Virus record (IMG/VR): IMGVR_UViG_3300037294_000266
Coordinates: 62,001 to 126,000 of that record
Direction: 5' to 3' (one strand)
DNA length: 64,000 bases
In this document: positions 3,418 to 58,865 of the stretch, one piece after another
How positions within the stretch are numbered: the stretch's first letter is position 1
Layout: each line of letters starts with the position of its first letter
Position numbers and translations under genes: made by a program
The notes under the pieces: generated by a model
What the model saw: the letters and a program-made list of their open reading frames with translations, nothing else
Databases searched by the model: none
What the model was told of the DNA's origin: nothing

Positions 3418-3430
3418 CTGCTCCTTGCCG

Positions 3431-4612: not shown

Positions 4613-4652
4613 GATGCCTCCATTATTCGGTTTGGTTATGCTATCATCGATA

Positions 4653-4659: not shown

Positions 4660-4688
4660 CGACTAAAATAAAATGCAATCAGGTGATA

Positions 4689-4713
4689 GGAGAGGTGGGT
4701 TCCCCACCTCTCC
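4689..4713. terminator. Intergenic stem-loop
   Basis: GGAGAGGTGGG-TTC-CCCACCTCTCC, 11-bp perfect stem. Confidence 0.7.
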
Positions 4714-4721
4714 ATTATGGC

Positions 4722-5743: not shown

Positions 5744-5759
5744 GTCATCTCCTTTATAA

Positions 5760-6113
5760 TCAATGGTATTTGAAAACCAATGGCAGTCGATAAGTGACTC
5801 TGACACCAGCGCCGTTGCAATAGGTGACATCGATACCTACTTCGCCAGCTTCACCGCTACCAGCTGCAAAGGTAATGCATATACCGGCATCATCAAGCAT
5901 GTCTTTAGCAAACGACCAGAAGTTACAGGCTCTCTGAGTGTTCACGTAGGCCATGTTGTCAGCAGGGAATAGCACTCGATGGATGTGTTGCGCAAGTCCA
6001 TCGATGCTGTTGTCGGCAACCAATGAAGCTTTTCCAGATTTATGAAGTCGCAGAAGAAATTCAAATAACGTCCTCTGCTCTCTGGTGAGAAACTCTACGT
6101 CAGACGTCATCAA
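5760..6113 (-). CDS. Hypothetical protein
   Basis: 117 aa in operon. Confidence 0.65.
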   Translation of the reverse strand: MMTSDVEFLTREQRTLFEFLLRLHKSGKASLVADNSIDGLAQHIHRVLFPADNMAYVNTQRACNFWSFAKDMLDDAGICITFAAGSGEAGEVGIDVTYCNGAGVRVTYRLPLVFKYH

Positions 6114-6304
6114 TAATGCCTCATCTTGCCATTACGGGCACGGTGGTAGAATGGTTGCGAGACCAGTTTGGGATTAGTGCGTTCGCCGTGATCAGCTTTG
6201 CTAGTACTGTTACGACGACGCATCTCTTCTTCAGAGGTGTCGTCAACGGCTTCGGGTTCGTAATAGTACATGTGTGAATAATTGAAGTCTCGTCCGGTAT
6301 TCAT
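6110..6304 (-). CDS. Hypothetical protein
   Basis: 64 aa, GGAGG SD. Confidence 0.65.
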   Translation of the reverse strand: MNTGRDFNYSHMYYYEPEAVDDTSEEEMRRRNSTSKADHGERTNPKLVSQPFYHRARNGKMRHY

Positions 6305-6313
6305 ACTGACCTC

Positions 6314-7027
6314 CTACTTACCGTCCTTTACAATGACCCACTTGTAAAAGCCGATGAATGAATTGATAGTGAACACTGTCCACATTACGACAATAGGCAT
6401 CGACCCTTCTCCATCAAGTGCAGGAAGCACCCACATGTAGATACAGAACAGATTGGCGGTTATCCAGAAGAACCACTGCTCAGCGTAATGTTTAACCATC
6501 AGCACAGTCCCAACTAGAGACAGTACGAGCATCGCTGCATCTGCGTAAGGATACGGATTGTCAGTATGGACTGCGAAATAATAGTGGACGATGCTGATGA
6601 AGAATACTGTCAGTCCACTGACTATAATCATCATACGACGAGTAAGAACATTGACTTTGACTTCGACGTCAAGACCATTAGACTCACCCATCGATTTATA
6701 CCACGTCCACCAGCCCCAGAACTGCGCACCAACGAACAATACGTTCAGAGATGCTGTACCGTACAACTTAGCATTGAACGCCACTACAGCCATGCCTACG
6801 ACGCCCACCATCCCCCAGTAGAAGTTGGACAAGCGACCCTTAGCGACTAACAGCACACAAACCACGTTAGCGATGGCCGTAACGATGTCGAGAGTGTTAC
6901 TTTCCATCAAGAGGGTGGACAGAATGATAGCGCCCACGGCTACTGCCAGCCACAGGCGATCCATGACACCCCAGCCTTTGAAGTCGCTCCAGATACTGTT
7001 CAGGCCTACTTGAATTGCTTCTTTCAT
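6314..7027 (-). CDS. pnuC: Nicotinamide riboside transporter PnuC
   Basis: Multi-TM protein with KGRLSNFYWG, GWWTW, PYADA and EQWFFWITAN motifs. Located next to nadR. Confidence 0.9.
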   Translation of the reverse strand: MKEAIQVGLNSIWSDFKGWGVMDRLWLAVAVGAIILSTLLMESNTLDIVTAIANVVCVLLVAKGRLSNFYWGMVGVVGMAVVAFNAKLYGTASLNVLFVGAQFWGWWTWYKSMGESNGLDVEVKVNVLTRRMMIIVSGLTVFFISIVHYYFAVHTDNPYPYADAAMLVLSLVGTVLMVKHYAEQWFFWITANLFCIYMWVLPALDGEGSMPIVVMWTVFTINSFIGFYKWVIVKDGK

Positions 7028-7185
7028 TTAGCGTTCCTGCCTTTAAGTGAAAGTTTCCGAATGCTTTCTCTCCATGCTAATTTCTTAGTTAGAGAGAAGT
7101 TCTGATATTTCCGACGCATCTTAATTTTGAAGCTAGGGTGTATGATTCGGAAAACATATTCTTTCTTCATGGTAAGATTTTTCAC
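7024..7185 (-). CDS. Small basic protein (53 aa) between nadR and pnuC
   Basis: GGAGG followed by GTG at 7185. Stop overlaps the pnuC ATG (ATGA). Below the ORF-track cutoff. Confidence 0.5.
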   Translation of the reverse strand: MKNLTMKKEYVFRIIHPSFKIKMRRKYQNFSLTKKLAWRESIRKLSLKGRNAK

Positions 7186-7208
7186 ACGACCTCCACGAAA
7201 TACAATGT

Positions 7209-8321
7209 TTAGATGTTGTAGTCGGACATGTAATCGTCGATGATCGAGACGGCTTCCATGTAACGCTTGTTGAAGTTATCAGACTCGATGGTGTAGGTAT
7301 ACTCCGGAGTCTGGTTAGGATATTCGACCAGCATGTTCTGGAACAGATCCCAGGTCTTGGTGCGGTTCGGATTGCTGCGCATGCCATCGTCTACCCACGG
7401 CACATTGTCTCGCAGAATGATAACCAGGTCGTAGTTTTCAGACCGGGCAATTGCCGAGACCACTGGATTCGAACAACCTTCGTAGAGTCTGTGGTAGAAC
7501 TCGGTGATTAATGCGTTCGTGTCAACCAGGCAAATTCGATTGGCAGACCGCATTGCTTTCTCTTCCAGGTGCTTATGACGATACGCAATCAACGGGTAGT
7601 CAGAACTACGCAACGTAGCCTCACTGCCAGCCAACTCAGTCTCGACATAGACACGACCGTACTCCTCTACCCATGAAGTATTGAAGTATTTGGCCAGTGC
7701 TCTTACCAAGGTGGTCTTGCCTGTGGATTCCGTACCGAGGATCACCACCTTGCGAGTGTAATCGCGGCGTACAATGGACGGCAGATACTCCCAATTGGCG
7801 TAAAGGTTTTCACGTACCTTGGTTGCTGAGATAGGCATGGTAGTACGATGGGCATCAACCACTTCATGGCTGACGTACGGGAGATACTTCTTGTAGTTCT
7901 CATCGTAGTCAACTTCACTGCTGAAGATAGCAGCTGTCCTGGCCGTACGTTGGAAACTCACTTCTACCTTTCGATTCTCGAGACATATTGGTGATTTATC
8001 CGCAGCCAAGTGACCGTTAATCAATTTACCTAACATCCCAGCGTACGCTTCCCAGCCATTGGGATACTGGGGGATTTCAGATTCATCGATTACAGCGACT
8101 TCGATGTGCTTGTCTTGTGCGAAGGTCTGCTGTAACCACCGCAGCCGGTTCTTCAATGCCAGGACTTCACGATCACGAGGCCGCTGGGAATCTACCCAAC
8201 GCTGATCGTGACTGAGTACCACAATGACTTTCTTAGCCTTGGTAGCTGCCTGGTTAATGAGCATGATGTGCCCACGAGTCAGTGGGGCAAACTTACCCAC
8301 CACAAATCCTAAATCGTACAT
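7209..8321 (-). CDS. nadR: NadR-type bifunctional NMN adenylyltransferase / nicotinamide riboside kinase (no repressor HTH)
   Basis: GKFAPLTRGH (HxGH-like), ISATKVR, P-loop GTESTGKTTL, DTN, VPWVDDGMR. Start at 8321 with GAGG SD. Confidence 0.92.
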   Translation of the reverse strand: MYDLGFVVGKFAPLTRGHIMLINQAATKAKKVIVVLSHDQRWVDSQRPRDREVLALKNRLRWLQQTFAQDKHIEVAVIDESEIPQYPNGWEAYAGMLGKLINGHLAADKSPICLENRKVEVSFQRTARTAAIFSSEVDYDENYKKYLPYVSHEVVDAHRTTMPISATKVRENLYANWEYLPSIVRRDYTRKVVILGTESTGKTTLVRALAKYFNTSWVEEYGRVYVETELAGSEATLRSSDYPLIAYRHKHLEEKAMRSANRICLVDTNALITEFYHRLYEGCSNPVVSAIARSENYDLVIILRDNVPWVDDGMRSNPNRTKTWDLFQNMLVEYPNQTPEYTYTIESDNFNKRYMEAVSIIDDYMSDYNI

Positions 8322-8373
8322 GCTAATTCCTCTGATGACATAGAGCACAGGGACGTCCCTGTGCTCTATGTAT

Positions 8374-8850
8374 TTATAACGTAGTGACAGTGATCTTTCC
8401 AATGTCTAACGTCGCTTCAAAATCACGATGCCAGAGTTTATGGAATTCGGCTTTCTTAGAAATCATGGAGAGTAAGTAACATGCATACGCACGCTCTGCA
8501 CTTCCCATGTCACTTCGCTCAATTCCAAACATGCCGTTATTGCGAGTCACAAGAACCGTTCTAAGGAATGTATTCCGTAACTCAAACGTAAGCTTTATGA
8601 CGTCGTGTTCGAGGAGCAGCGGTGAAATGTCCTGACCGTCCAAGTGCTTCCACATGGAATTCAAGACAGGACCTGCTCGACACACCTTACCTTTATATCC
8701 ACCCAACCAGGTCGATGCAATGTGCAGTTCGCTTAATAACACCTGCTCTGCTAGACGCCCTGGACTGTAGATACACTGACCACTTGGATCAAACCCAATG
8801 CATTTGAACACTCGGTTAAGTCGCTTGAAGAATTCTTCACGATCGTCCAT
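8374..8850 (-). CDS. Hypothetical protein
   Basis: Start revised to MDDREEFF. Confidence 0.65.
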   Translation of the reverse strand: MDDREEFFKRLNRVFKCIGFDPSGQCIYSPGRLAEQVLLSELHIASTWLGGYKGKVCRAGPVLNSMWKHLDGQDISPLLLEHDVIKLTFELRNTFLRTVLVTRNNGMFGIERSDMGSAERAYACYLLSMISKKAEFHKLWHRDFEATLDIGKITVTTL

Positions 8851-21811: not shown

Positions 21812-22129
21812 TCAGAATTTCAGATCGAATTGCACGGTTAGCTGATGAGCCAGCCAATCGGCCCTGTCACACGCCCGGCGATCTACGTACGACAGGTCGC
21901 CATAGCCCGACACACTGTAACCAATAAGCTGTGCGAACTGCTGGTGCTCTTCTTGAGTATAACGATTAAGTGCTATCTCATTAAGGCCATAGCCGTTAAG
22001 TTTACTGACCTCTAACACATCCCTGACGATTCGGTTGTCGAGGAAACGAATATGGCCATTAGAATCAAGATAGACGGGCTGGATAGGGGGTTCGTCACCC
22101 TCGTAAAGGATTACCATTTCACCGGACAT
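21812..22129 (-). CDS. Conserved phage hypothetical protein
   Basis: QP...G.IRF..N.IV...LNEIA...QFAQLIGYSVSGY pattern. Confidence 0.7.
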   Translation of the reverse strand: MSGEMVILYEGDEPPIQPVYLDSNGHIRFLDNRIVRDVLEVSKLNGYGLNEIALNRYTQEEHQQFAQLIGYSVSGYGDLSYVDRRACDRADWLAHQLTVQFDLKF

Positions 22130-22628
22130 AATTAATCACCTCTGTGGCATAACGACCACCTGTCTCTTTCATTACCTTACGGTGTTCTTCCAACCAGTCA
22201 GTGGCTGAAGCTGCCTCTGATTTACGTCGTTTAGGGCAGGTGTAGTTAGTAGTGACGTAGGTTATCTGCCACGAACCACCAAGGTCGATTTCTTCACCCG
22301 TACTTTCAAACACAGACTTGAGTGATGAATAAACGACTCCCGTGGCGAAATCAATACTGATCTCCAAGGTATGGATATACCCAGGAGTTCTAATCGTTCG
22401 ACTTACCGGCCCTTCTTTAAGGATCATTGCAGGAGTGAGTTCGATGGCCTGTCCTGCTATCGTTATAAACTTAACCATCGGACTTTGTTCAACACGTTCA
22501 CGTATCTTTAAACGTCCATCATCCGCATCCTGAAGCGCCGCTATATCGGCCGCAGATGTGGATTGTGATGCTTTATTGGCATATTGAGAAGATATAACAA
22601 GTGAAAGCATATTGAGCTTCATGTACAC
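22119..22628 (-). CDS. Hypothetical protein
   Basis: 169 aa, GAGGTG SD. Confidence 0.65.
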   Translation of the reverse strand: MYMKLNMLSLVISSQYANKASQSTSAADIAALQDADDGRLKIRERVEQSPMVKFITIAGQAIELTPAMILKEGPVSRTIRTPGYIHTLEISIDFATGVVYSSLKSVFESTGEEIDLGGSWQITYVTTNYTCPKRRKSEAASATDWLEEHRKVMKETGGRYATEVINYVR

Positions 22629-22643
22629 CTCACATCGGGCAAA

Positions 22644-22668
22644 AGAGTGGTGGGATTCCCACCACTCT
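22644..22668. terminator. Intergenic stem-loop after tmk
   Basis: AGAGTGGTGGG-ATT-CCCACCACTCT. Confidence 0.7.
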
Positions 22669-22672
22669 ATCT

Positions 22673-23356
22673 TTAGACAACAGGTCTTGCACGCATGACA
22701 GCATCGATATTCATCAGATGAGGTATTAGCTGAGCCTTTACCTGTTCTTCATTGACTTCCGCATTGATCAGTACGTAGCGTTCTTTGTTAGCCCACGCAA
22801 AGTCACGATACAGGTTACGGGTCTTATAATGGAAGTCAGAACCCATTTTGTCGAAATGATTCAACTTACTGGATTCACCACGCAACGCCAAGCGCTTACG
22901 AAAAACCTCAGGATCGCCATCGAGAACAATGGTCAGGTCTGGTACGATTCCGTCGAATGCCAGGTTGTGCATCTCACGCAGCTTAATGATGTCAAGTCCA
23001 CGACCAGCACCCTGGTAACAGAACGTACTGTCACAGAATCGATCAGTGATAACCAGACTACCTTCGGCAAGACGCGGCTTCACCATGTTGTCAAGATGCA
23101 GTGCACGAGCCACCATGAACAACAGTGTTTCTGCCATCGGGGAGATTGGCTCAGAAAGACTTTCACGATCGGCAAGAATGTACTTCTCACGAATCTGTTC
23201 AGCCAAAGGAGTACCGCCTGGTTCACGGGTCATGACAGGAACGATTCCCACAGAAGAAAAATACTCCTGCATGAAGTCTCGCATGGTGGTCTTACCAGAA
23301 CCGTCGGCACCTTCCAGACACAAGAAGAAACCTTTGTTTTTAGGTGTTGAAGACAT
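22673..23356 (-). CDS. tmk: Thymidylate (dTMP) kinase
   Basis: LEGADGSGKTT, TREPGGTPLAEQIRE, ITDRFCDSTFCYQGAGRG, PDLTIVLD. Confidence 0.95.
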   Translation of the reverse strand: MSSTPKNKGFFLCLEGADGSGKTTMRDFMQEYFSSVGIVPVMTREPGGTPLAEQIREKYILADRESLSEPISPMAETLLFMVARALHLDNMVKPRLAEGSLVITDRFCDSTFCYQGAGRGLDIIKLREMHNLAFDGIVPDLTIVLDGDPEVFRKRLALRGESSKLNHFDKMGSDFHYKTRNLYRDFAWANKERYVLINAEVNEEQVKAQLIPHLMNIDAVMRARPVV

Positions 23357-23449
23357 GCATGTCCCTTTTATAAATGGCGAGTCGTCTTTGGTAACGTTCG
23401 TAGGGCCAAAGCCACGCGCCAGGGCAGTTGCTCGATTCATTCGCATGAG

Positions 23450-23668
23450 TTAGCCTTTCTGAGGTTCGTTATCCTGAGACGTATCTTCAGGACTGAGATT
23501 GAATAATTGAGTCAGCGACATACCGCCTGGCCGCTTGACCTCCTTGACTTCGCAAACGACGCCTTGATCACCGTAACGATCGGTGGTCTTAAAACCAGGA
23601 GTCCGACACATCGAGGTCATGCTACTATGGCCAGATTTTAAAACGACTCCAGCATTTTCATTCAGCAT
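23450..23668 (-). CDS. Small hypothetical protein (72 aa)
   Basis: GAGG SD before ATG 23668. The longer ORF-track start overlaps the neighbouring gene. Confidence 0.55.
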   Translation of the reverse strand: MLNENAGVVLKSGHSSMTSMCRTPGFKTTDRYGDQGVVCEVKEVKRPGGMSLTQLFNLSPEDTSQDNEPQKG

Positions 23669-24176
23669 GATCGACCTCTTTGAATTCCAACGACAGTACG
23701 TTATCCACAATCTCTTGCAACTGCGGATTCGATTTGACACGGTATGTGAACTGACCGCTCTGGATACCGTCCGTCTTACAGACCCATTCAATAATTCGCT
23801 GCCCAGGCTTAGGGTCTTGGACGATTTCAACAATCGGTTCCCAGATCGAGTACTTCTGGTACTTGAAATTGCGATAGCGGGCCCACTGTACGAACGCTCT
23901 GCTTTTATAGCAGTCGTCTTCACCATCACCGTGGATCAGATCCACGATATTCACGATGCCAGCCGAGACTTTCATCATTCGGAAGAAGTTATCATCGAAC
24001 GACATCTGACTGATATGAAAGTTAGGTTCTTCCTTTGGACTGTGGCCCCAGGCTTTCCACCAGATACCTCGGAAGAAATCCTTCACCGGCAGCCAAGTGT
24101 TGACAAACTTGATTACCAGATAACATTGAAAGAAATGTCTGATGGCGTGCTGAACTTCTTGACTGATAGTGCTCAT
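23658..24176 (-). CDS. Hypothetical protein
   Basis: 172 aa. Confidence 0.7.
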   Translation of the reverse strand: MSTISQEVQHAIRHFFQCYLVIKFVNTWLPVKDFFRGIWWKAWGHSPKEEPNFHISQMSFDDNFFRMMKVSAGIVNIVDLIHGDGEDDCYKSRAFVQWARYRNFKYQKYSIWEPIVEIVQDPKPGQRIIEWVCKTDGIQSGQFTYRVKSNPQLQEIVDNVLSLEFKEVDHAE

Positions 24177-24178
24177 GG

Positions 24179-24808
24179 CTACTCCAGTGTTGGAATGGGT
24201 ATGTTTCGCTTGGTTAGTTGGACCTCGACCCAGGATTTGAACTTGTCACGTTCTTCTTCCAGATACAGGTTTACTCTTTTGACATTGTTCATGATGGCAA
24301 TTTGCACGGCAGTGTTTGTACCGCCTTTAACCAGACCTTTCTTGCCCACCGGTTTAGCGTAGAACAACACTACCCACACCGGATGAATTAAAGTCTCGCT
24401 CAGCACCTGCATTGGATTGCGGCTATGTAGACCGATGCCCGATGCAAACAACCCTTCAAATGAACCACGAGCCCTGAAAGCCATAGCTTTTGATTCTTCA
24501 TGGGTTTCGTAACGTTCTGCTTCATGACAACCAATGACGGGATCGTGAGGAAGACCCCGCTGGTTCTTGAGACCGGTGTAGTAGATCTGTGCAGGAGGCA
24601 TGTCTACCGCTTTACCAGTTAAGTAGCCACTGAGAAAGAAGAAGTCGGCACCTTCGGCATCTCCAGTACTAAGTACCCCACCTAAGAGGGCCATGCATCG
24701 ACCGGCCCAGATAAGAAAGGGGACGTGCTCAACAGGAACTTCTCGAGAACCTACGCCACACCAACGGAAATGCCACTTGAAGCCCATGCTCTTCCACAAA
24801 TCAGTCAT
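24179..24808 (-). CDS. SLOG-superfamily (DprA/YpsA-like) nucleotide-binding protein
   Basis: CGVGSREVP...LSTGDAEGAD...VLFYAKP...GGTNTAVQIA. Confidence 0.75.
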   Translation of the reverse strand: MTDLWKSMGFKWHFRWCGVGSREVPVEHVPFLIWAGRCMALLGGVLSTGDAEGADFFFLSGYLTGKAVDMPPAQIYYTGLKNQRGLPHDPVIGCHEAERYETHEESKAMAFRARGSFEGLFASGIGLHSRNPMQVLSETLIHPVWVVLFYAKPVGKKGLVKGGTNTAVQIAIMNNVKRVNLYLEEERDKFKSWVEVQLTKRNIPIPTLE

Positions 24809-25421
24809 GCCAACTCACTTTAGCCAGGTTCATGTAGCGTTTCATGCCGTCCTTAAATAGATCGGCACAGCCATTATTCGCACCAACAAGCGCCATCTTG
24901 AATTCAAGTAAAGCCTGTCGCTGCTGCCGCAATGCTACTTCGGCGACTGCACCGCCAGTTCCAACGCAGTACAGTGGACATAGTGCTTTCTTAAACACCA
25001 TTCCATTCTTTCTTTCATATTCGTGAACAGCTACAAGCGAACTGTACATGGACATGTAAGGAAGAAGAACGTCTGTAAACTGAGTGGGTACAAACATGGT
25101 TGGCGTGTAGACAAATCCACGTCCGTTGACCACGACCACTTCAGCGCGTCCTACAGGCATCATGCCGAAGTATTTGGTAGCGATCATCTGACGTATAGTA
25201 GTTTCAACCTCACTACCATAGACATCAACCACGCCCTGATCGAACCCTCCAGTCATGTGACCAAAACTATTGCCAGGGCAGAACACCAGATCAAAACGGT
25301 TCAGACTTTCACGGACCTCATCGTCGTCCTTTAAGAACACTGAAATGAAGTCCACCGAATCGTCCACTATGGCAAACTTAATTTGAGAGCGATCGTGGAC
25401 AACGAAAGACATGCGTTCCAT
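24801..25421 (-). CDS. Macro domain (ADP-ribose-binding/hydrolase) protein
   Basis: VFCPGNSFGHMTGGFDQGV...PTMFVP...CVGTGG. Confidence 0.8.
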   Translation of the reverse strand: MERMSFVVHDRSQIKFAIVDDSVDFISVFLKDDDEVRESLNRFDLVFCPGNSFGHMTGGFDQGVVDVYGSEVETTIRQMIATKYFGMMPVGRAEVVVVNGRGFVYTPTMFVPTQFTDVLLPYMSMYSSLVAVHEYERKNGMVFKKALCPLYCVGTGGAVAEVALRQQRQALLEFKMALVGANNGCADLFKDGMKRYMNLAKVSWHD

Positions 25422-25984
25422 TAAACGTCACCGTCTAACATAGCGCGCATGGCGCACAGATCAGGCATGGCCAGATCCATGGTAGTGATGATGCCGGCGT
25501 AATGTTTGATCTTGTCGTAATGGGCCATCTCAAATGGAATGCCTACGAACTTGTCGTAAAGTACCGATTTTAACGACTGGCTGTCAATCACGTCATCCAC
25601 GTGATCAGGGTCGACAATATTGCGCAGGGTCATAGGGACGATCAGATGACCGTCGAAGACTGTGCCGCGAGAGATGCTGTTAAAAGCCATTCGCAGATGA
25701 CCGGGAATAGGTGGGATGTTCATCTGACCGGTATCGCCCTGTTCCGACTGGTAATGTGCAGCCATCACATGGTAACTATCTAACCACCAGATAAATAGGT
25801 TACGGTTCTCGACCGAGTTTGGATCGGCCATCTCAACGAAACCCTTGCCACCATGATCAAGACGATAACGAGTCTCTGTTGAGATCACGTAGTAGATATT
25901 GTCATGGGTGATCTGGCCAGCTTGAAAAGCTTCTTCCAAGGCAGCCCGATCTTCGTAATTGATTTCTGGTTTGTAGTTGAGCAT
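25421..25984 (-). CDS. Hypothetical protein
   Basis: 187 aa, TAATG coupling. Confidence 0.7.
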   Translation of the reverse strand: MLNYKPEINYEDRAALEEAFQAGQITHDNIYYVISTETRYRLDHGGKGFVEMADPNSVENRNLFIWWLDSYHVMAAHYQSEQGDTGQMNIPPIPGHLRMAFNSISRGTVFDGHLIVPMTLRNIVDPDHVDDVIDSQSLKSVLYDKFVGIPFEMAHYDKIKHYAGIITTMDLAMPDLCAMRAMLDGDV

Positions 25985-25987
25985 TAC

Positions 25988-26179
25988 TTATCCCCTGTGC
26001 ATGATTTCAGCGAGGCCTTTACGGGCGACACTGAGTCGGTAATGAGCCGGTTGTCCAGCCACTTGGTAATGGACGCCTTTCTTTAGTTGCCCGGCATCAT
26101 GGGCGCGTTCTAGAGCAATCTTACTCTGGAACAGAATGGGTTGAGTCTTCATATTTTCTTTGGATTCGTTAATACACAC
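25988..26179 (-). CDS. Hypothetical protein
   Basis: 63 aa. Confidence 0.55.
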   Translation of the reverse strand: MCINESKENMKTQPILFQSKIALERAHDAGQLKKGVHYQVAGQPAHYRLSVARKGLAEIMHRG

Positions 26180-26223
26180 TATCTTGCCGATAGGTTTGTT
26201 TTTACAGATTGTAGGACTGACAG

Positions 26224-26254
26224 CATACAGGGAGGGCAGAACCCTCCCTGTATG
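26224..26254. terminator. Intergenic stem-loop of the CATACAGGGAGGG family
   Basis: CATACAGGGAGGG-CAGAA-CCCTCCCTGTATG. Confidence 0.75.
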
Positions 26255-26260
26255 TGCCGA

Positions 26261-26599
26261 CTAGACCGCTTTGTAAAACTTCAAGAACTTGGCCAGTGAG
26301 ATACTCTGGCTGTGCTTGTCGCTGGGCTGGTCTTTGTACAACGCTACATCCTTACGGATCTCGATCAGGTAGACCTGAGTTGTCTGGCCATTACGGACCG
26401 TCTTGTACCAGCTGTTGAGCTCACCGGTGAAGGCAAGAGGTTCAGGCTGGACTTGAGGAGGACGACGGGTGATCTCAGGCGCAGCAATTTCAACCAGCCG
26501 ACCAAGCGACTGGAAACTATCGGCACGTTGACCACGACCTTTAGATTGAAACTCGTCATTACGACTGGAGCATGGCGTTGTCATGGATTGTTGGCTCAT
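26261..26599 (-). CDS. Hypothetical protein
   Basis: 112 aa. Confidence 0.6.
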   Translation of the reverse strand: MSQQSMTTPCSSRNDEFQSKGRGQRADSFQSLGRLVEIAAPEITRRPPQVQPEPLAFTGELNSWYKTVRNGQTTQVYLIEIRKDVALYKDQPSDKHSQSISLAKFLKFYKAV

Positions 26600-27329
26600 T
26601 TACAGTTCCTTTACTCTTTGAGTTTTGGTTTTCTGTTGAAGGTGGTTTAAGTTCTGGAAGGTGTCGCATGAAGGAATTAGAACCGAAGATAGGGTTGGAT
26701 GTCAGGTCGACTCGTTCCACCATTACTGCGATCTCACTCATGTGTAAGGCGATATCAGACTGAAGTGCCAGTCGAAGACGCTCTATATCCTCATCACTGA
26801 TCAGCGTGTGCTGTCCATCGGGTATAACACAGAGTCTTAAGACCCCTAGGTAATCCCCTTTTAAATCAATAAGGTTGGCTGAAATGTAGAAGGGTGCTTC
26901 TATCCCGAACATAACAGTCAACATTTGCTGTTGATGATTAAGTATCGCAAACGACTTATGCGTGTAGCGGTGCGTAAGTTTCTCTTCCCAGAAGAACTCT
27001 GGGTTGATATCAAAGCGATACTCGTTAAGTAAACGTGCGGCAGGCCTCCTAGCAGCTCCGAAGTGCACCGATACCTCAGCACCGACATGAAGCAATCGCT
27101 TCCCTGCCAAATACTCTATAAACGCCGGTAGGGCGTTCTCAGTATAGATGTCTTTACCAGACCTGTTAGTCTTTTCACAGAACGTAGCCATCTCCTTACT
27201 TAAATCAATATCTGAGATAGCTACGACTGTGATTCTCCTCGGACGATCAGGGACGTTGTCGTCGAAGGTGAAAGTTATCAATTCTCCTGCTTTAACGAGT
27301 ACCAGTCCCAGTGTGTGTTTACCGGGCAT
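26559..27329 (-). CDS. Hypothetical protein
   Basis: 256 aa, downstream of TACATTA at 27369. Confidence 0.7.
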   Translation of the reverse strand: MPGKHTLGLVLVKAGELITFTFDDNVPDRPRRITVVAISDIDLSKEMATFCEKTNRSGKDIYTENALPAFIEYLAGKRLLHVGAEVSVHFGAARRPAARLLNEYRFDINPEFFWEEKLTHRYTHKSFAILNHQQQMLTVMFGIEAPFYISANLIDLKGDYLGVLRLCVIPDGQHTLISDEDIERLRLALQSDIALHMSEIAVMVERVDLTSNPIFGSNSFMRHLPELKPPSTENQNSKSKGTVNEPTIHDNAMLQS

Positions 27330-27384
27330 AAAGGCGAACCTCGGGTTGAGGGATGGGTATTCAAGTGATAATGTACTGTTGAAA

Positions 27385-28752
27385 TTATTTCTGTTCGTTA
27401 ACGAACGATGAATATTCAGGCGCTGTACGGTCTACCATCACCACCACTTCTGTAGTGACTTGGTGAATGCGCTGATGCATGCCTGTACCTGACAGTGCTG
27501 ATAAACCGTGCGTGTGCACAACAACACCATAAAGGAACTTGACTTCGTTGTTAACAAGGAATCCTACTTCACACTGCATTCCTGGAATAATGAGATCAGG
27601 GTCACTGTTCTCCCAGTGCATGGTAACGTAAGCTCCGTTACGTGCCGAGATCTTAGAGGCTTCTTGGAAAGCATTGGATGACGACACATCTTGGCTGACA
27701 CGCGTCATGGTAGGACCACGTCGAGCGACTGCGTCATACTCGTTTGCGTTGTTAGTTCTTTTTGCCACGGCTTTGTTATTACTGATTTCGAGGAATCCTT
27801 CCATCGCATTATCAGTGTTAGCAAACCGCGCTCCGTTACCGAGGTTAAGTAACATAGCCTCAGAGGGATCAGAACGACTCATGCCGCCCGTGATGAGGAT
27901 ATTGACAGTCTTGTCTACCTTACGCCACGTGCGTTCGATACCACGCGTTCTGGAACTGGGGGCGATGATGAACATCAATGTCCGTTCTGAGACATCGAAC
28001 AACTTGTAGTTATATAGAGGCCATACATACCAGAAGCCCTTCTGGAAATAACAACCAATGTCTGCTGTGTAGATCCCACCAAACTGGGTCTGCAACATCC
28101 CTGCCAGCGCAACCAGTGGAGTGCCATGTGGAATTACCAAATGGGCTCGTTTAGTTTTATTGTTCGGCGGGATAGCGTTGACTCCCAAGACAGCGTTTTC
28201 AATATCTGTCTTATAGTCAAGTGCCGTTTTATGCAGCAGCGATATAAGTACCTCAAACGGAACCGAATCTCTGAATACACCGCCCACTAACGTAGATCGA
28301 ATGAGTGCAAAGACTTCATCTTGCAATTGGACCGTGACAGTCTTGAGTCCCATGAGGTCAGCGGTATATTCACTCGCCACCTCTGGCCCGGAACTCATCA
28401 TAGCGCCTTCAGATTCCATGGGAAGGAACGCATCGAAGGTTTGCTCTAAGATGACATGTCCCGAATCCATTCCAGCCGAGTTGAGTTTTGTTCTCACCAC
28501 GGTGATCTTGAGATTCTCTTTAAACGGGGCGACCTGATGAAGATACTTGCCCCAAGGTACGACCAACTTTATCTGGATCTCGTCACCAGCCGCATTGCGA
28601 TAGTCACGAATCCAATCAACACTCACCACCGACATGGCTTCCAACGTACCCTTTTCAGTAACGAAGGTTGCAGTGTACTTGTAATAAGCCTCGGTACCTA
28701 ACTGGGTGATCAATGCTGCTTCAGCACCCAGTGGTGTGTTTTGGAATTCCAT
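27385..28752 (-). CDS. Virion structural protein (phiKZ gp101-like; possible tail/baseplate hub)
   Basis: 455 aa. Position at the end of the gp82-gp101-like syntenic block. Function is inferred. Confidence 0.65.
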   Translation of the reverse strand: MEFQNTPLGAEAALITQLGTEAYYKYTATFVTEKGTLEAMSVVSVDWIRDYRNAAGDEIQIKLVVPWGKYLHQVAPFKENLKITVVRTKLNSAGMDSGHVILEQTFDAFLPMESEGAMMSSGPEVASEYTADLMGLKTVTVQLQDEVFALIRSTLVGGVFRDSVPFEVLISLLHKTALDYKTDIENAVLGVNAIPPNNKTKRAHLVIPHGTPLVALAGMLQTQFGGIYTADIGCYFQKGFWYVWPLYNYKLFDVSERTLMFIIAPSSRTRGIERTWRKVDKTVNILITGGMSRSDPSEAMLLNLGNGARFANTDNAMEGFLEISNNKAVAKRTNNANEYDAVARRGPTMTRVSQDVSSSNAFQEASKISARNGAYVTMHWENSDPDLIIPGMQCEVGFLVNNEVKFLYGVVVHTHGLSALSGTGMHQRIHQVTTEVVVMVDRTAPEYSSFVNEQK

Positions 28753-28769
28753 AGGACACTCTCATGTAG

Positions 28770-29360
28770 TTAACGGCCTTTCTTACGTTCCGCTAACATT
28801 TGCTCAATTGAGTTCATGGCAGCGCCAGTGTCTTCGACAATAGCCCCGACACCCGTCGGATTGAACAGCTCAGCAATCCCTTCACCCATACCGAACAAAG
28901 CAGACACTCGTTTCAGATGAGGGACGTCCTGTACTTTTGGCTTGAACCCTTTAACCTGATTTTGGATCGTCTGACAATAATCCGACATCAGGTAGAGTGA
29001 TTCGAGAGGAGCGTTCTTTACGTTCGGATCGTTATTGACATGGCGCGCCCAGAAATGAAGGTGTGCAGTAAGGACTTCGTAGATTGTCACGAGATCCTTA
29101 CCATCGCGCATCTTAATGTCCGCCCCTTTTTCATAGAGGCGTAAGATGTCTTCAATTGTCCCGCCGATGTCAACGTATTCATTCATCACGGCTTGGTTCA
29201 ATGCTTTAGAACCTGTATCGAGATGACCGACTGTTTTGTTGTACTCTTTCGAATACCGATAATAGCCGGGTATAGCGTACAAATACGTCTTGTTGAAGAT
29301 ATGCTTACGCACAGCTTCTGGACTGCTTAGATCAACAGTCGAGGCGGGAACTTGGCTCAC
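28770..29360 (-). CDS. Conserved phiKZ-like protein (gp100-like)
   Basis: 196 aa, synteny. Confidence 0.6.
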   Translation of the reverse strand: MSQVPASTVDLSSPEAVRKHIFNKTYLYAIPGYYRYSKEYNKTVGHLDTGSKALNQAVMNEYVDIGGTIEDILRLYEKGADIKMRDGKDLVTIYEVLTAHLHFWARHVNNDPNVKNAPLESLYLMSDYCQTIQNQVKGFKPKVQDVPHLKRVSALFGMGEGIAELFNPTGVGAIVEDTGAAMNSIEQMLAERKKGR

Positions 29361-30754
29361 TTGATTCTCCTCCGGTACACGCGCAGCAGGGTGAACAGAA
29401 TCGGGAAGTAATAGAACCTCTCGACGTTATCCCAGCGCGGGGCACCTTTACATAGGTCGTCCAACATCTTGATGTCAATCGCTTGGCCCTTAAGAGCAGC
29501 CATCGTCAATGTTTCAAGCTTGGACAGTTTGGTTTCGGGCGTGTGTAAGTAGAAGTCTTCACTAAGAACATAGAAGTCGTCTACCGTCACCTGCTTAATC
29601 TGAGGGGCACGATCGGGCGATACAGCCTGATAAATCTCAAGCGTTGGATCCATTACCAGATCAGTGCGGCACAGTCGATTCAATTCACGGAACCGAGCAT
29701 GACCACGCACTAACTTGTTAAGACTTGGATCTAACGGAGGACAATACCCTGAATCTACATAGGTAGGGGACATGTCAGGATAAATAACTGCCCTCACGCC
29801 CGTGTAGTAAATGCTGTTCAATGTAGGACGTCCATTGAAGAAACACCCTACCCCAACAATACCTGCATGATGGATACTCATGCTCAGCATAGCGTGGTCC
29901 ATCGATTCCAGACAGTTCCAGAACGTGAACTCGTACATCGCCTGATCGCCCTGGACGTTGAACTCTGTCAGGTGGCGCATCATTGGATGATCGTCGGTGG
30001 TCAGGATGGTCTTGATATACCGAATCAGGAATGGATCGTACGTTGTCATTGGCTGATTCGGAATCAACAGTGTCTTCAGGTCACGGGAATAGAAGTCGTG
30101 GAAGTAAAGAGTAATCAAACGCCCGTAATGTTCCTTCAGGTTATTGATACTCTCGGTCTGATCTTCCGACAGCATTGGATCACTGCCAGACTCTAAGAAG
30201 TCTTTATGGAACACTGACGTCTGTTGAGTCTTTGCTTCTAGCTCTGCACGTAACTCAGCAGAACTCAGTCGGGTTACGATGTATTCAATCTCGTAGACCG
30301 CTGAATTGTAGTGAGAAAGCTTACGCGTGCTGGTGACAGTCAATAATCCTTCACGTCCATCACCGATATCAGCCAAGAACACTTCACCTTCAGTCGGAAC
30401 CACTACGCCATAGACGTTAGCCGTGCCTGTGATAGAGAAGTCCTTGGTATCTCCATCCTGAGATGACGACAGCGGAGACGTGACCTTCAGTTCAAGTCCT
30501 TTGATCTGATGATACTGTTGATACACGGGATGTAGTGCTGATTCGAATGGACGGGAGTCGTCGTCCTTGCCACGAATACGTGAGAAGTAGTCGACGTCCC
30601 ATGCCTGACCAGCCACGTAGGTAGTCAGGATGTCCAAGCGTACGGCTGACGTATCGACAACAGCACTGGAATACGACTTAGGTTGTACCGTTACAGGTTT
30701 GACAACAGGTTCTTTTACCGTGGTGTCTATGTTACCGTGTTGTGGGACTGGCAT
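29357..30754 (-). CDS. Virion structural protein (gp99-like)
   Basis: 465 aa, synteny. Confidence 0.65.
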   Translation of the reverse strand: MPVPQHGNIDTTVKEPVVKPVTVQPKSYSSAVVDTSAVRLDILTTYVAGQAWDVDYFSRIRGKDDDSRPFESALHPVYQQYHQIKGLELKVTSPLSSSQDGDTKDFSITGTANVYGVVVPTEGEVFLADIGDGREGLLTVTSTRKLSHYNSAVYEIEYIVTRLSSAELRAELEAKTQQTSVFHKDFLESGSDPMLSEDQTESINNLKEHYGRLITLYFHDFYSRDLKTLLIPNQPMTTYDPFLIRYIKTILTTDDHPMMRHLTEFNVQGDQAMYEFTFWNCLESMDHAMLSMSIHHAGIVGVGCFFNGRPTLNSIYYTGVRAVIYPDMSPTYVDSGYCPPLDPSLNKLVRGHARFRELNRLCRTDLVMDPTLEIYQAVSPDRAPQIKQVTVDDFYVLSEDFYLHTPETKLSKLETLTMAALKGQAIDIKMLDDLCKGAPRWDNVERFYYFPILFTLLRVYRRRIK

Positions 30755-30756
30755 GG

Positions 30757-32388
30757 CTACACCTTATTTCGTTTGAGTGCGACAATGGTAAGGATCTCGA
30801 CGTATGGCACGTCCATACGGAAACCAAAGTTGTCGTCATTATCAAGCCAAGTATCGCTAGGGTAGCGATTGTTGTTGTTAGTTCCGGTGGGTGTATCGAC
30901 TCCACCATATTGCTGATGGCGCATCCAACCGAAGAACCGCTTGATGTACGAGATACTCAACTTACCGTCTTCAGTCATGTGATTCTGATACGCATCCTCC
31001 ACATCAAGGCGGTTGACCACAGATTGGAAGAGCTTCAGTGCCACGATACCATTCTCATGAAGATCCATGAGTGCCTGTTCGGTATACTTCTCGATCTCTG
31101 TACAGAAACTGAGACGCATGTGGTACGACTGGCGAAGATCAACTGGTTCGGTTGTCTCGACTGTAAAGGCGGTAGGTGTCAACTTGATAGACAGTACACC
31201 ATCAGCGACAGGTTCTTTCCCACGGTAGATACCGAAGTGGAACGGAGACTGTCCTAACGTTACCATCTTAGATCCCTGAGCTCGCATGAACGCCATGACA
31301 TCTTCAGAGAAGTTGGCTCCTTGAATATCGGCTTCATCCAACGCTAAGACCATGTTCTTCTGACTGAACACCACCATCCAGTTAATGAGAGATGTGGTGT
31401 AAGGCCGTACCGAGTCAGGAATCCATTCGTCGTATTCAGGAATGCACTGACCACCTAGCGCTTTACGTGGTATTCGAGCAAGAAGGTCAAAGTGATCCAG
31501 CGCAAACCGGTAATCACTCTTATACGTCGGGAGTGCCAATGGGTCTTCTGTACGCTCACGCAATACAATGAAGTCTGGTGCGATGAGTTGGTTGTGTACA
31601 ATCTGAGGATAAACCACATTCAAGCTAACAGGCTTGTGATAACTGAACTTGTAATTGAATTGAACAAGGTAGCTAGGGCCGCTCTCGTTCTTCTCTTCCT
31701 CTATTGGCAACTCGAAATCAAACCACCCTTGAATACCGACTTGTTTCTCGCCGATTACAAGGAGTGTATTCCGGTCGTCTCCACCCTGAGTGGTCAAGAC
31801 TTTTGCACGTTTGGTGTAATGTAGCTGAAGATAATCGCCTAGCTTGTCACCATACCCTGCCTGAGCCTCTCTAAGCTCGTACACGTGCTTTAAGAGCATT
31901 GAGCAGAAGTCTGGTACCGGGAAGTGGTAATCGGCCTCGTGGAGGTGTGCCTGGCGGTTGTCAGCCATTCGTACTTTTACGTCGTCACGCCATACAGCAG
32001 CTTCTTGTTTCGACTTAGCGCGGTAGGTAAAGTTAAGCTCCATCTCTGTAGCACTGTAGATCGGCTTGATGTGAATGCCGATGTTAGGGTCTGCAAAGAT
32101 AGGTTGGGCATATGGGTGTCTGACTTCAGCGTTGATTACTTCGGAGTCGACATACGTTTCACGGAACGAGACAATGACACGTCCATCATGAATCAGGCGC
32201 AGATCGGGAGTGTTGAGGTCGCCGATCTCTGTACCAGGTTGTGCGGCTTTCTGTTGTTCACCACGGATCTCAACTCGAGTTGTCTTATCGAGACTAGTGA
32301 TGTGGATTATTTTGTCAATTACCGATTTGGCAACTGGGCGAGATACCGAATCCAAGGTATTCTCGATAGGGATCAGAAGGTTGGGCAT
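30757..32388 (-). CDS. Virion structural protein (gp98-like)
   Basis: 543 aa, two TATG motifs upstream, synteny. Confidence 0.65.
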   Translation of the reverse strand: MPNLLIPIENTLDSVSRPVAKSVIDKIIHITSLDKTTRVEIRGEQQKAAQPGTEIGDLNTPDLRLIHDGRVIVSFRETYVDSEVINAEVRHPYAQPIFADPNIGIHIKPIYSATEMELNFTYRAKSKQEAAVWRDDVKVRMADNRQAHLHEADYHFPVPDFCSMLLKHVYELREAQAGYGDKLGDYLQLHYTKRAKVLTTQGGDDRNTLLVIGEKQVGIQGWFDFELPIEEEKNESGPSYLVQFNYKFSYHKPVSLNVVYPQIVHNQLIAPDFIVLRERTEDPLALPTYKSDYRFALDHFDLLARIPRKALGGQCIPEYDEWIPDSVRPYTTSLINWMVVFSQKNMVLALDEADIQGANFSEDVMAFMRAQGSKMVTLGQSPFHFGIYRGKEPVADGVLSIKLTPTAFTVETTEPVDLRQSYHMRLSFCTEIEKYTEQALMDLHENGIVALKLFQSVVNRLDVEDAYQNHMTEDGKLSISYIKRFFGWMRHQQYGGVDTPTGTNNNNRYPSDTWLDNDDNFGFRMDVPYVEILTIVALKRNKV

Positions 32389-32434
32389 TGGGGTGCTCCC
32401 CGGTTGATGAACTTCGTCATAAAATCGGCATAAA

Positions 32435-32454
32435 GAGGAGGCCGAGACCTCCTC
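32435..32454. terminator. Intergenic stem-loop
   Basis: GAGGAGG-CCGAGA-CCTCCTC. Confidence 0.6.
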
Positions 32455-32460
32455 CGTATG

Positions 32461-33876: not shown

Positions 33877-33888
33877 GCCAGCACCTAT

Positions 33889-58858: not shown

Positions 58859-58865
58859 GTTGACC

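What the first reader, a model, noticed from the sequence alone, without database searches (positions are those of the whole stretch)
24179..25421. Coupled SLOG and macro genes mirror the two Thoeris signal-sensing domains
The genes overlap by 8 nt. Type I ThsA senses gcADPR through SLOG, and type II ThsA senses His-ADPR through a macro domain (established). Free-standing copies could sponge or hydrolyse ADPR-derived signals or reverse ADP-ribosylation. With nadR/pnuC and the second macro at 61096, they form a dispersed NAD/ADPR toolkit.
Basis: inference. Interest (0 to 1): 0.6.

Follow-up and report, generated by a model that had tools for sequence, protein, structure and literature searches.

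The report
Coupled phage macro and SLOG genes
A phiKZ-like jumbo phage has an ADP-ribose-handling macrodomain gene overlapping a DprA-like SLOG nucleotide-binding gene; both are real, but this pairing was already described and predicted to counter NAD-based bacterial immunity, and close relatives often lack the macro gene.

Summary
Both genes are real: two minus-strand ORFs, 206 aa (24801-25421) and 209 aa (24179-24808), overlapping by 8 nt (ATGACTGA). The upstream protein is a Macro_2/yeast-Ymx7-type macrodomain with an intact N-x6-GG-F-D catalytic loop. The downstream protein is a stand-alone SLOG domain. It is closest to DprA and Moco-carrier folds, not to ThsA, and is the ortholog of phiKZ gp207.

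The genome is a 266.6-kb DT01-like chimallivirus. The orthologous pair (gp212/gp213) was already noted in the pPa_SNUABM_DT01 paper. Iyer et al. 2022 already predicted that viral SLOG+Macro neighbourhoods degrade ADPR-derived immune signals.

Linkage is facultative. In the 12-genome clade the backbone is UP187-[Macro_2]-SLOG-TMK. Five genomes carry the macro and seven lack it entirely.

Across 80 wider loci, SLOG genes recur next to three unrelated macro families and next to Prs-like/Nampt-like (NARP1-type) pairs. That supports an NAD/ADPR role without identifying the ligand.

Neither protein resembles the Thoeris sensors beyond superfamily level. The other 'toolkit' genes match systems published in 2026: PnuC+NadR is NARP3 and the second macro is AdfM (anti-DarT2).

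Verdict: new member of a known, computationally predicted kind, with biochemistry untested.

The parts
24801..25421 (-). Macro_2 / Ymx7-type macrodomain protein, 206 aa, acidic (pI 5.8). The catalytic loop PGNSFGHMTGGFD (N51...G58 G59 F60 D61) is invariant in the family.
24179..24808 (-). Stand-alone DprA-like SLOG domain protein, 209 aa, basic (pI 8.7), ortholog of phiKZ gp207. Conserved motifs: GVGSR (18-22), GxAxGxD (49-55), HxRN (128-131), GGTNT (162-166). No acidic residue at the position of the LOG catalytic Glu.
24801..24808 (-). 8-nt overlap ATGACTGA: the SLOG start codon lies inside the last codons of the macro gene.
25421..25984 (-). 187-aa protein of unknown function, joined to the macro gene by TAATG. 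It is the conserved upstream neighbour of the SLOG gene in every genome of the clade, with or without the macro.
23658..24176 (-). 172-aa protein of unknown function, starting 2 nt after the SLOG stop. This is the variable slot between SLOG and thymidylate kinase in relatives.
22673..23446 (-). Thymidylate kinase, the conserved downstream anchor of the SLOG gene. TMK lies within 6 kb in about 20 of 80 related loci.
6314..8402 (-). PnuC-like transporter (6314-7027) and NadR-like NMN adenylyltransferase/ribosylnicotinamide kinase (7209-8402), adjacent and co-directional. This is the architecture published as NARP3.
   Evidence: PMC13464706
61096..61539 (-). Second macrodomain, 147 aa, 39% identical to phiKZ gp104 (AdfM, DarG2-like anti-DarT2 factor). 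The positions of AdfM N23 and K78 are kept.
   Evidence: PMC13309987

Best explanation
The locus is a facultative juxtaposition of two separate NAD/ADP-ribose-related phage genes, inside a tightly packed co-directional gene run of a DT01-like, nucleus-forming (chimallin-encoding) jumbo phage.

Shown: gene 1 is a Macro_2/Ymx7-type macrodomain with a complete catalytic loop. Gene 2 is a stand-alone DprA-like SLOG domain, the ortholog of phiKZ gp207. It keeps the phosphate-binding loops of the superfamily but lacks the catalytic Glu of LOG enzymes.

Inferred for the macro: it hydrolyses a group on the 1'' position of free ADP-ribose. The most likely reaction is ADPR-1''-phosphate to ADPR, as in yeast Ymx7/Poa1p and the phage enzyme Adpp. 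Less likely substrates are O-acyl-ADPR or an ADP-ribosylated macromolecule. It behaves as an accessory counter-defence gene that is gained and lost.

Inferred for the SLOG: it binds, rather than LOG-type cleaves, a phosphate-rich adenine nucleotide derived from NAD/ADPR. It would act as a general, conserved helper of the phage's NAD/nucleotide economy.

The two proteins probably act on related metabolites and are co-translated here, but neither needs the other. Together with NARP3 (PnuC+NadR), an AdfM-like macro and a Nudix gene, they form this phage's layer against NAD-consuming and ADP-ribosylating host defences.
For: - Folds and motifs support both domain identities.
- The macro is closest to an enzyme with demonstrated Appr-1''-pase activity: 1njr, Z 14.6 over 187 aa. 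A phage Poa1p-like macro, Adpp, was shown to convert ADPR-1''P to ADPR against the aRES defence (bioRxiv 10.64898/2026.01.28.702374).
- The macro has the patchy distribution typical of anti-defence genes: 5 of 12 clade genomes, always in the same slot, needing at least 2-3 gains or losses.
- SLOG homologs occur in 380 phage records.
- In 80 IMG/VR loci, SLOG genes lie within 6 kb of a Prs-like + Nampt-like pair in 15-16 loci. In L041 and L076 they abut that pair directly.
- SLOG genes lie within about 1 kb of three unrelated macro families: Macro_2, a PF01661-type macro in Pakpunavirus-like NARP1 clusters including cultured phage HHBS9_1, and an AdfM-like macro.
- On the SLOG tree these associations need 6 (macro) and 5 (NARP1-type) changes.
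- Osterman et al. found NARP1 in only 859 of 20,185 phages, so about 20% of SLOG loci is an enrichment.
- The LOG Glu position is Q/K/R or A in this family.
- Iyer et al. 2022 reached the same general prediction independently.
Against: - No biochemistry exists for either family.
- The window's genome has no Nampt-like gene and hence no NARP1, so an Adpp-like product (ADPR) has no known phage-encoded sink here.
- The SLOG's best sequence and fold matches are to the ssDNA-binding protein DprA.
- In phiKZ-like phages the SLOG's steady neighbours are DNA/nucleotide-metabolism genes: thymidylate kinase, dCTP deaminase/dUTPase, NAD-dependent ligase, PhoH. These fit a DNA role as well.
- Gene clustering in jumbo phages is loose, and 6-kb neighbourhoods are weak evidence.
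- The macro could equally act on ADP-ribosylated protein or nucleic acid.
Confidence: 0.5

Rival explanations
1. First reader's reading. The free-standing SLOG and macro proteins are decoys of the two Thoeris sensors. The SLOG sequesters or cleaves 3'cADPR/2'cADPR (type I signal) and the macro sequesters or cleaves His-ADPR (type II signal), making the pair a dual anti-Thoeris module.
For: - ThsA SLOG and ThsA macro do sense these signals (PMC11204291; bioRxiv 10.1101/2024.01.03.573942).
- Both folds are of the right superfamilies.
- Phage enzymes and sponges against cADPR signals exist, and one of them, RyDEP, sits in NARP1 operons just as SLOG genes do.
- Iyer et al. 2022 proposed cADPR degradation by viral SLOGs.
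Against: - No PADLOC/ThsA model is hit by either protein.
- ThsA SLOG ranks about 3 Z units below DprA and Moco-carrier protein.
- ThsA macro is absent from the top 50 structural matches, and the macro is of an enzymatic Ymx7 type.
- The SLOG is conserved in 380 phage records, including most phiKZ-like phages. That looks more like a housekeeping gene than an accessory anti-Thoeris gene.
- The two genes are unlinked or the macro is absent in most relatives.
Confidence: 0.12
2. DNA-centred reading. The SLOG protein is a minimal DprA-like ssDNA-binding recombination or repair mediator working with the phage RecA-like system. The macro removes ADP-ribose from DNA or proteins, so the block serves genome maintenance.
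For: - DprA is the best profile hit (E 3e-3) and ties for best fold (Z 12.7). The DprA-type G-S-R and GxAxGxD motifs are conserved. The family is basic, median pI 8.5.
- 23 of 66 relatives hit Pfam DprA.
- Neighbours are thymidylate kinase, dCTP deaminase/dUTPase, NAD-dependent ligase, PhoH and thymidine kinase.
- Iyer et al. 2021 suggested an SSB-like role for jumbo-phage DprA/Smf proteins.
- ShosA, a DprA-like antitoxin, binds ssDNA.
- Deletion of the DprA/Smf-like ORF83 of phage DruSM1 sensitises it to the Avs (AVAST) type III defence, whose effector the EVADES preprint describes as a non-specific dsDNA endonuclease. Deletion of the phage ligase has the same effect.
Against: - The protein is a bare Rossmann domain without DprA's SAM or DML1/winged-helix parts.
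- The EVADES analysis found ORF83 lacks DprA dimerisation and RecA-binding residues and predicts AMP binding instead.
- Recurrent adjacency to macro genes and NARP1-type pairs is not expected for a recombination mediator.
- The phage already has a dedicated DarG2-like macro, AdfM-like, for DNA de-ADP-ribosylation.
Confidence: 0.2
3. Coincidental neighbours. The macro gene simply inserted into a permissive slot upstream of a conserved SLOG gene. The overlap reflects compact phage gene packing, and the two products have unrelated roles.
For: - Macro_2 is absent from 7 of 12 clade genomes while UP187-SLOG-TMK stays intact.
- The coupling is not conserved: annotated ends share 1 nt in DT01, and a gap of about 340 nt separates the genes in L010, L011 and L013.
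- All junctions in this block are equally tight.
- Macro_2 homologs in phiPA3 and Noxifer have unrelated neighbours.
Against: Three unrelated macro families sit next to SLOG genes in separate lineages. By my rough estimate, chance would give well under one such case. Iyer et al. 2022 report SLOG-Macro fusions and a genome-level co-occurrence above chance.
Confidence: 0.18

Closest known systems
Pseudomonas phage pPa_SNUABM_DT01 gp212 (Macro_2) / gp213 (YspA-SLOG)
   Same: Orthologous pair (46.5% and 66% aa identity) in the same order and context: macro, SLOG, small hypothetical gene, thymidylate kinase. It is already annotated and discussed as NAD/ADPR-processing in the DT01 paper.
   Different: A different phage species with no megablast-level DNA match. 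In DT01 the annotated ends share 1 nt rather than 8. DT01 also carries a NADAR gene, which is absent here.
Viral SLOG + Macro/NADAR neighbourhoods and fusions (Iyer, Burroughs, Anantharaman, Aravind 2022, Viruses 14:1977)
   Same: Stand-alone viral SLOG next to a macro gene in a large phage. The paper predicts they process soluble ADPR derivatives from host immunity.
   Different: That paper places most viral SLOGs in a YpsA-like clade. Here Pfam and PDB profiles put the family nearest DprA, with 0 of 66 members hitting YpsA. The prediction remains untested.
Yeast Ymx7 (YMR087W, PDB 1njr) and Poa1p; phage Adpp of the NARP1-AP pathway
   Same: Macrodomain with the N-x6-GG-x-D loop. Ymx7 is the best sequence and structure match. 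Adpp shows that a phage macro can dephosphorylate ADPR-1''P to defeat RES-type NAD+ cleavage.
   Different: About 18% identity to Ymx7. This genome has no Adps/Namat partner. tblastn with the Macro_2 protein found no Vibrio phage record at E <= 1e-3. I did not fetch the Adpp sequence of Vibrio phage Gary, so the two were not compared directly. Activity is untested.
DprA/Smf Rossmann-fold domain; ShosA antitoxin
   Same: Best profile match, tied best fold, and shared G-S/T-R and GxAxGxD motifs.
   Different: No SAM or C-terminal DML1 domain. There is a family-specific insert carrying RGSFEGL...HxRN. The gene context includes NAD-salvage genes.
ThsA sensors of Thoeris (type I SIR2-SLOG; type II macro-TM)
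   Same: Same two superfamilies, both with ADPR-derived ligands.
   Different: No fused effector domain. No PADLOC hit. Lower structural rank for the SLOG, and no match listed for the macro.
AdfM (phiKZ gp104), DarG2-like anti-DarT2 macrodomain
   Same: A chimallivirus-encoded macrodomain used in counter-defence.
   Different: The AdfM ortholog in this phage is the other macro, at 61096-61539 (39% identity). The Macro_2 protein shows no BLAST similarity to gp104 (E 1.0).
RyDEP, a cADPR glycosidase inserted in NARP1 operons
   Same: An accessory gene beside Adps/Namat that feeds ADPR into NAD+ rebuilding. SLOG genes occupy comparable positions in L041, L076 and Pakpunavirus-like phages.
   Different: An unrelated fold (RyR R12 repeat). 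No activity is known for the SLOG.

Membership tests
SLOG superfamily | Rossmannoid three-layer alpha/beta fold with a parallel sheet, matching solved SLOG members | tested here: met
   AF2 pLDDT 96.7. VIA Z 12.7 (DprA, MCP), 10-11.5 (LOG, PpnN), 8.5-9.9 (ThsA SLOG), 9.6 (TRPM2 MHR1/2).
SLOG superfamily | Glycine-rich phosphate-binding loops after strand 1 and in the GGxGT-like motif | tested here: met
   GVGSR (18-22) and GGTNT (162-166) are invariant or nearly so in 66 sequences.
DprA/Smf (Pfam PF02481) | Sequence membership above the Pfam threshold | tested here: inconclusive
   The query has no Pfam hit. 23 of 66 relatives hit PF02481 at E <= 0.01, best 2e-9. The family profile hits DprA chains at E 3e-3.
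DprA/Smf (Pfam PF02481) | Accessory SAM and/or DML1/winged-helix domains; ssDNA binding and RecA loading | tested here: not met
   The protein is a single 209-aa domain. ssDNA binding and RecA loading are not testable with these tools.
LOG phosphoribohydrolases | PGGxGTxxE motif with catalytic Glu | tested here: not met
   The position three residues after the motif Thr is Q/K/R (Q169), or A167 in the other register. No acidic residue in either case.
Thoeris type I ThsA SLOG sensor | Match to ThsA models; fusion to a SIR2 or TM effector; gcADPR-binding pocket | tested here: not met
   No PADLOC hit at E <= 0.1. Stand-alone protein. ThsA ranks 31st or lower. Ligand binding is not testable here.
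Macrodomain superfamily | Macro fold plus the N-x6-GG-[VLIF]-D loop and a second glycine-rich phosphate loop | tested here: met
   Z 14.6 to 1njr and 12-13.6 to YmdB, macroH2A, DarG and TARG1. N51, G58, G59, F60 and D61 are invariant; G154 is invariant and T155 nearly so.
Macro_2 (Pfam PF14519, Ymx7-like) | Score above the gathering threshold; Ymx7-like N- and C-terminal extensions | tested here: inconclusive
   The query scores 25.5 bits against a cut-off of 27. 20 of 24 relatives are pre-annotated PF14519. The 1njr alignment spans residues 1-201.
Thoeris type II ThsA macro sensor | Match to ThsA macro models or structures; fused transmembrane effector | tested here: not met
   No PADLOC hit. 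Not among the top 50 Foldseek or VIA matches. Stand-alone soluble protein.
Adpp / NARP1-AP | Macro gene within a NARP1 (Adps + Namat) operon; ADPR-1''P phosphatase activity | tested here: not met
   No NAPRTase-family gene in the 266.6-kb genome. The enzymatic activity is not testable here.
AdfM / DarG2-like macro | Sequence similarity to phiKZ gp104 / DarG2 with catalytic N and K | tested here: not met
   BLASTP E 1.0 against gp104. The other macro, at 61096-61539, meets it with 39% identity, E 2e-21.
NARP3 (for the nadR/pnuC part of the finding) | Adjacent PnuC-type transporter and NadR-type NMNAT/RNK genes in a phage | tested here: met
   PF04973 at 141 bits. phrog_3462 E 5e-121 and phrog_1880 E 2e-53, adjacent on the same strand. 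Function is inferred from PMC13464706.

The most novel reading that the evidence does not exclude
The phage DprA-like SLOG family (phiKZ gp207, DT01 gp213, this gene, and Pakpunavirus 'DprA-like' proteins; at least 380 phage genomes) could be an unrecognised, widespread accessory of phage NAD+ reconstitution. It would be a binder or non-LOG-type glycosidase for a cyclic or otherwise modified ADPR species (for example N-glycosidic cADPR variants). It would neutralise TIR-type signals and hand ADPR to NARP1, in the way RyDEP and Adpp do. Macro genes would then be recruited next to it repeatedly because they trim the same metabolites.
Probability: 0.2. Interest if true: 0.7.

Novelty: new member of a known kind. 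Interest (0 to 1): 0.3.

Why it matters
If the prediction holds, stand-alone SLOG proteins would be a large, still uncharacterised class of phage counter-defence or NAD-economy factors. They are present in therapeutic-candidate Pseudomonas phages of the phiKZ, PAK_P1/Pakpunavirus and DT01 types.

The DT01-like clade offers a natural experiment: near-isogenic genomes with and without the Macro_2 gene in the same slot. As it stands, though, the locus adds one more example to a published computational prediction. The accompanying 'toolkit' genes correspond to systems characterised in 2026 (NARP3, AdfM). A specialist would not be surprised by it.

Tried and rejected
- Megablast of 23000-27000 against GenBank phages gave no match.
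- NCBIfam and PADLOC scans gave nothing useful for the four genes of the block.
- phmmer of the SLOG protein against PDB gave only a chance hit. The family profile was needed to reach DprA.
- The ESM-Atlas feature search for the 187-aa upstream protein gave no lead above noise. For the SLOG it only returned viral 'DprA-like' clusters.
- The sigma-70 promoter and terminator scan of 22000-29500 found no more sites than shuffles. It is not informative for a phage with its own RNA polymerases.
- A literature search for phiKZ gp207 localisation or function found nothing relevant; the 'gp207' in Fossati et al. is a phiPA3 protein.
- DruSM1 ORF83 could not be compared directly because no sequence was held. 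The E. coli phages hit by the query are phAPEC8-like, not Queuovirinae.
- Complex prediction was not run. I do not claim that the two proteins bind each other, and the macro is dispensable in relatives.
- The large protein-representative search was not used, because the word search and family scans settled the identities.
- I considered and rejected a LOG-type phosphoribohydrolase (no catalytic Glu) and an AdfM/DarG-type role for the Macro_2 protein.
- Only genetic code 11 was used.
Full report
OBSERVATION. The window (G000:62001-126000 of a 266,646-bp IMG/VR virus record) carries two minus-strand ORFs at the stated coordinates: 24801-25421 (206 aa) and 24179-24808 (209 aa). The junction reads ATGACTGA, so the downstream start codon lies 8 nt inside the upstream gene. 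The gene upstream of the pair (25421-25984) ends TAATG on the macro start. The gene downstream (23658-24176) starts 2 nt after the SLOG stop. The pair is therefore part of a run of at least four tightly packed co-directional genes, followed after 211 nt by thymidylate kinase (22673-23446; Pfam E 7e-39). Both ORFs have many full-length homologs (85 and 24 clusters), so they are genuine genes.

WHAT THE GENOME IS. No GenBank phage matches at the DNA level. At the protein level the nearest cultured relative is Pseudomonas phage pPa_SNUABM_DT01 (66% and 46.5% identity). The genome encodes a homolog of the phiKZ nuclear-shell protein (E 2e-26) and phiKZ-type virion and polymerase families. It is a DT01-like chimallivirus-type jumbo phage.

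THE MACRO PROTEIN.
- Pfam Macro_2 scores 25.5 bits, just under the 27-bit cut-off, and 20 of 24 relatives are pre-annotated PF14519.
- The only significant PDB sequence hit is yeast Ymx7/YMR087W (1njr), an ADP-ribose-1''-monophosphatase.
- The AF2 model (pLDDT 86.3) matches 1njr best: Foldseek E 2e-8, VIA Z 14.6 over 187 residues. Next come YmdB, macroH2A, DarG and TARG1 at Z 12-13.6.
- The loop PGNSFGHMTGGFD, which is the N-x6-GG-x-D signature of catalytic macrodomains, is invariant in 24 sequences.
- The PHROG label 'tail protein' (phrog_14717) is inherited annotation and is not supported by the fold.

THE SLOG PROTEIN.
- The query has no Pfam hit. phrog_768 'DprA-like' matches at E 2e-36.
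- The AF2 model is very confident (pLDDT 96.7). VIA gives Z 12.7 to H. pylori DprA and to Moco-carrier protein, 10-11.5 to LOG, PpnN and ShosA, and 8.5-9.9 to ThsA SLOG.
- The family profile hits DprA chains at E 3e-3 and a LOG at E 0.33.
- 23 of 66 relatives hit Pfam DprA and none hits YpsA.
- Conserved positions are GVGSR (18-22), GxAxGxD (49-55), a family-specific RGSFEGL...HxRN...Q segment (114-134), GGTNT (162-166) and N180.
- The position of the LOG catalytic Glu is Q/K/R or Ala, so LOG-type chemistry is unlikely.
- The family is basic (median pI 8.5) and the macro family is acidic (5.5).
- The protein is 35% identical to phiKZ gp207. I found no functional data on gp207.

IS THE PAIR LINKED IN RELATIVES? 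In DT01 the orthologs gp212/gp213 are adjacent, and that record already carries Macro_2 and YpsA-SLOG notes.
- Among ten further genomes of the same clade from IMG/VR (SLOG 57-71% identical), the conserved backbone is UP187 - SLOG - (variable small genes) - thymidylate kinase.
- A Macro_2 gene sits between UP187 and SLOG in only three of them (L010, L011, L013), and there it is separated from the SLOG by about 340 nt.
- A profile search of the whole records finds no Macro_2 gene anywhere in the other seven, of which six are at least 94% complete. It does find the gene in all three positive controls.
- On a SLOG tree the 12-genome clade is well supported. The macro state needs three changes, of which at least two are forced by strongly supported branches. 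The window's nearest SLOG relative (L004) lacks the macro.
- In more distant jumbo phages both genes exist but lie far apart: Noxifer about 27 kb, RTH11 about 68 kb, HPP-Temi about 12 kb, and phiPA3 about 15 kb (gp271).
- The SLOG family occurs in 380 phage records and the Macro_2 family in 36.
- The SLOG is therefore the conserved gene and the macro a facultative neighbour.

WIDER CONTEXT OF THE SLOG FAMILY. In 80 IMG/VR loci (+-6 kb), the recurrent neighbours are:
- dCTP-deaminase/dUTPase-like genes: 28 loci.
- Thymidylate kinase: about 20 loci.
- A Nampt-like gene (16 loci) together with a Prs-like gene (15 loci).
- NAD-dependent DNA ligase: 13 loci.
- PhoH: 11 loci.

The Prs-like + Nampt-like pair is the architecture of NARP1 (Adps + Namat).
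- In L041 and L076 the SLOG gene abuts that pair directly; in L041 the SLOG and Prs-like ORFs overlap by 4 nt.
- In seven Pakpunavirus-like loci, and in cultured P. aeruginosa phage HHBS9_1, the order is Prs-like, Nampt-like, a PF01661-type macro ('phosphatase'), one or two small genes, then the DprA-like SLOG.
- A third macro type, AdfM-like, lies about 0.7 kb from the SLOG in L023 and L024.
- On the SLOG tree, macro adjacency needs six changes and NARP1-type adjacency five.

This is independent support for the SLOG-Macro association reported by Iyer et al. 2022. It also links the SLOG family to NAD+ reconstitution. Two other accessory genes of NARP1 operons have recently been shown to convert immune-derived ADPR species into ADPR: Adpp, a Poa1p-like macro acting on ADPR-1''P, and RyDEP, which hydrolyses 2'/3'cADPR. 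The window's own genome, however, has no Nampt-like gene and no NADAR gene. It has a Nudix gene outside the window.

THE REST OF THE 'TOOLKIT'.
- PnuC (6314-7027) and a NadR-like gene (7209-8402) are adjacent. They match the two-gene NARP3 pathway shown in 2026 to rebuild NAD+ from nicotinamide riboside against Sir2-HerA.
- The second macro (61096-61539; Pfam Macro 20.6 bits against a cut-off of 22) is 39% identical to phiKZ gp104 (E 2e-21), with the Asn and Lys aligned to AdfM N23 and K78. gp104 is AdfM, a nucleus-imported DarG2-like enzyme that removes DarT2 ADP-ribosylation from phage DNA.
- The Macro_2 protein shows no BLAST similarity to gp104.

INTERPRETATION. What is shown: the identity of the two folds, conservation of catalytic (macro) and phosphate-binding (SLOG) motifs, facultative linkage, and recurrent but lineage-specific association of SLOG genes with macro and NARP1-type genes.

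What is inferred:
- The macro is an ADPR-derivative hydrolase, most likely Appr-1''-pase-like, used as an accessory counter-defence gene.
- The SLOG binds an NAD/ADPR-derived nucleotide.
- The two act on related metabolites without depending on each other.

I put this at about 0.5. The rivals are:
- The DNA-centred reading, about 0.2, with the SLOG as a minimal DprA-like ssDNA mediator. It rests on the best fold and sequence matches, DNA-metabolism neighbours, ShosA's ssDNA binding and the DruSM1 ORF83 knockout phenotype on Avs type III alongside the phage ligase. The EVADES analysis predicts AMP binding for ORF83 instead.
- Coincidental adjacency, about 0.18.
- The specific dual anti-Thoeris decoy idea, about 0.12. 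It is weakened by the absence of any ThsA-model hit, the lower structural rank of ThsA, and the housekeeping-like breadth of the SLOG family.

NOVELTY. The exact orthologous pair was pointed out in the DT01 paper. The general hypothesis, that viral SLOG + Macro process host ADPR signals, was published in 2022. No experimental characterisation of a phage SLOG of this family turned up in the library searches. The locus is a new member of a known, predicted kind. The one possibly underappreciated point is the repeated placement of this SLOG family beside NARP1-type genes.

LIMITS. Neighbourhoods were sampled from 80 loci, not all phages. Prs-like/Nampt-like pairs were not distinguished biochemically from true Prs/Nampt. 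Structural conclusions rest on predicted models.

Noticed in passing
window 6314-8402 (-): Adjacent PnuC-like transporter and NadR-like NMNAT/RNK genes. This is the two-gene NARP3 architecture published in 2026, so far reported mainly in Salmonella and Escherichia phages. Here it sits in a DT01-like jumbo phage.
   Followed up: partly
window 61096-61539 (-): The second macrodomain is the ortholog of phiKZ gp104 (AdfM, anti-DarT2): 39% identity, with the catalytic Asn and Lys positions kept. The ORF list also shows a 404-aa TTG-start ORF (59966-61180) overlapping its 3' end by 85 nt. Its start was not checked.
   Followed up: partly
window 51060-51977 (-): A 305-aa protein made of Kelch repeats (Pfam Kelch_1 E 1e-50, five repeats). 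A beta-propeller of a mostly eukaryotic type is unusual in a phage.
   Followed up: no
window 25421-25984 (-): A 187-aa protein with no family, fold lead or Atlas lead. It is the invariant upstream partner of the SLOG gene in all 12 clade genomes and is joined to the next gene by TAATG here. It may be the SLOG's real functional partner.
   Followed up: partly
L041 5989-9114; L076 5992-9051; L093 (HHBS9_1, PQ287655) 2981-7550: DprA-like SLOG genes lie directly beside, or a few genes from, Prs-like + Nampt-like (NARP1-type) pairs. In Pakpunavirus-like phages a PF01661-type macro 'phosphatase' lies between them. In L041 a thymidine kinase precedes the SLOG.
   Followed up: partly
window 58322-58870 (-): NUMOD4/HNH-type homing-endonuclease-like gene (NUMOD4 E 1e-7).
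   Followed up: no
G000:C1:41845-42183 (-) (outside the window): Nudix hydrolase gene (74 bits). It could be the sink for ADPR in this phage, which lacks NARP1 and NADAR.
   Followed up: no
window 27385-35148 (-): The macro/SLOG block lies immediately downstream of virion structural and internal-head protein genes (phrog_3013, phrog_2497). Whether the two proteins are packaged in the virion is unknown.
   Followed up: no
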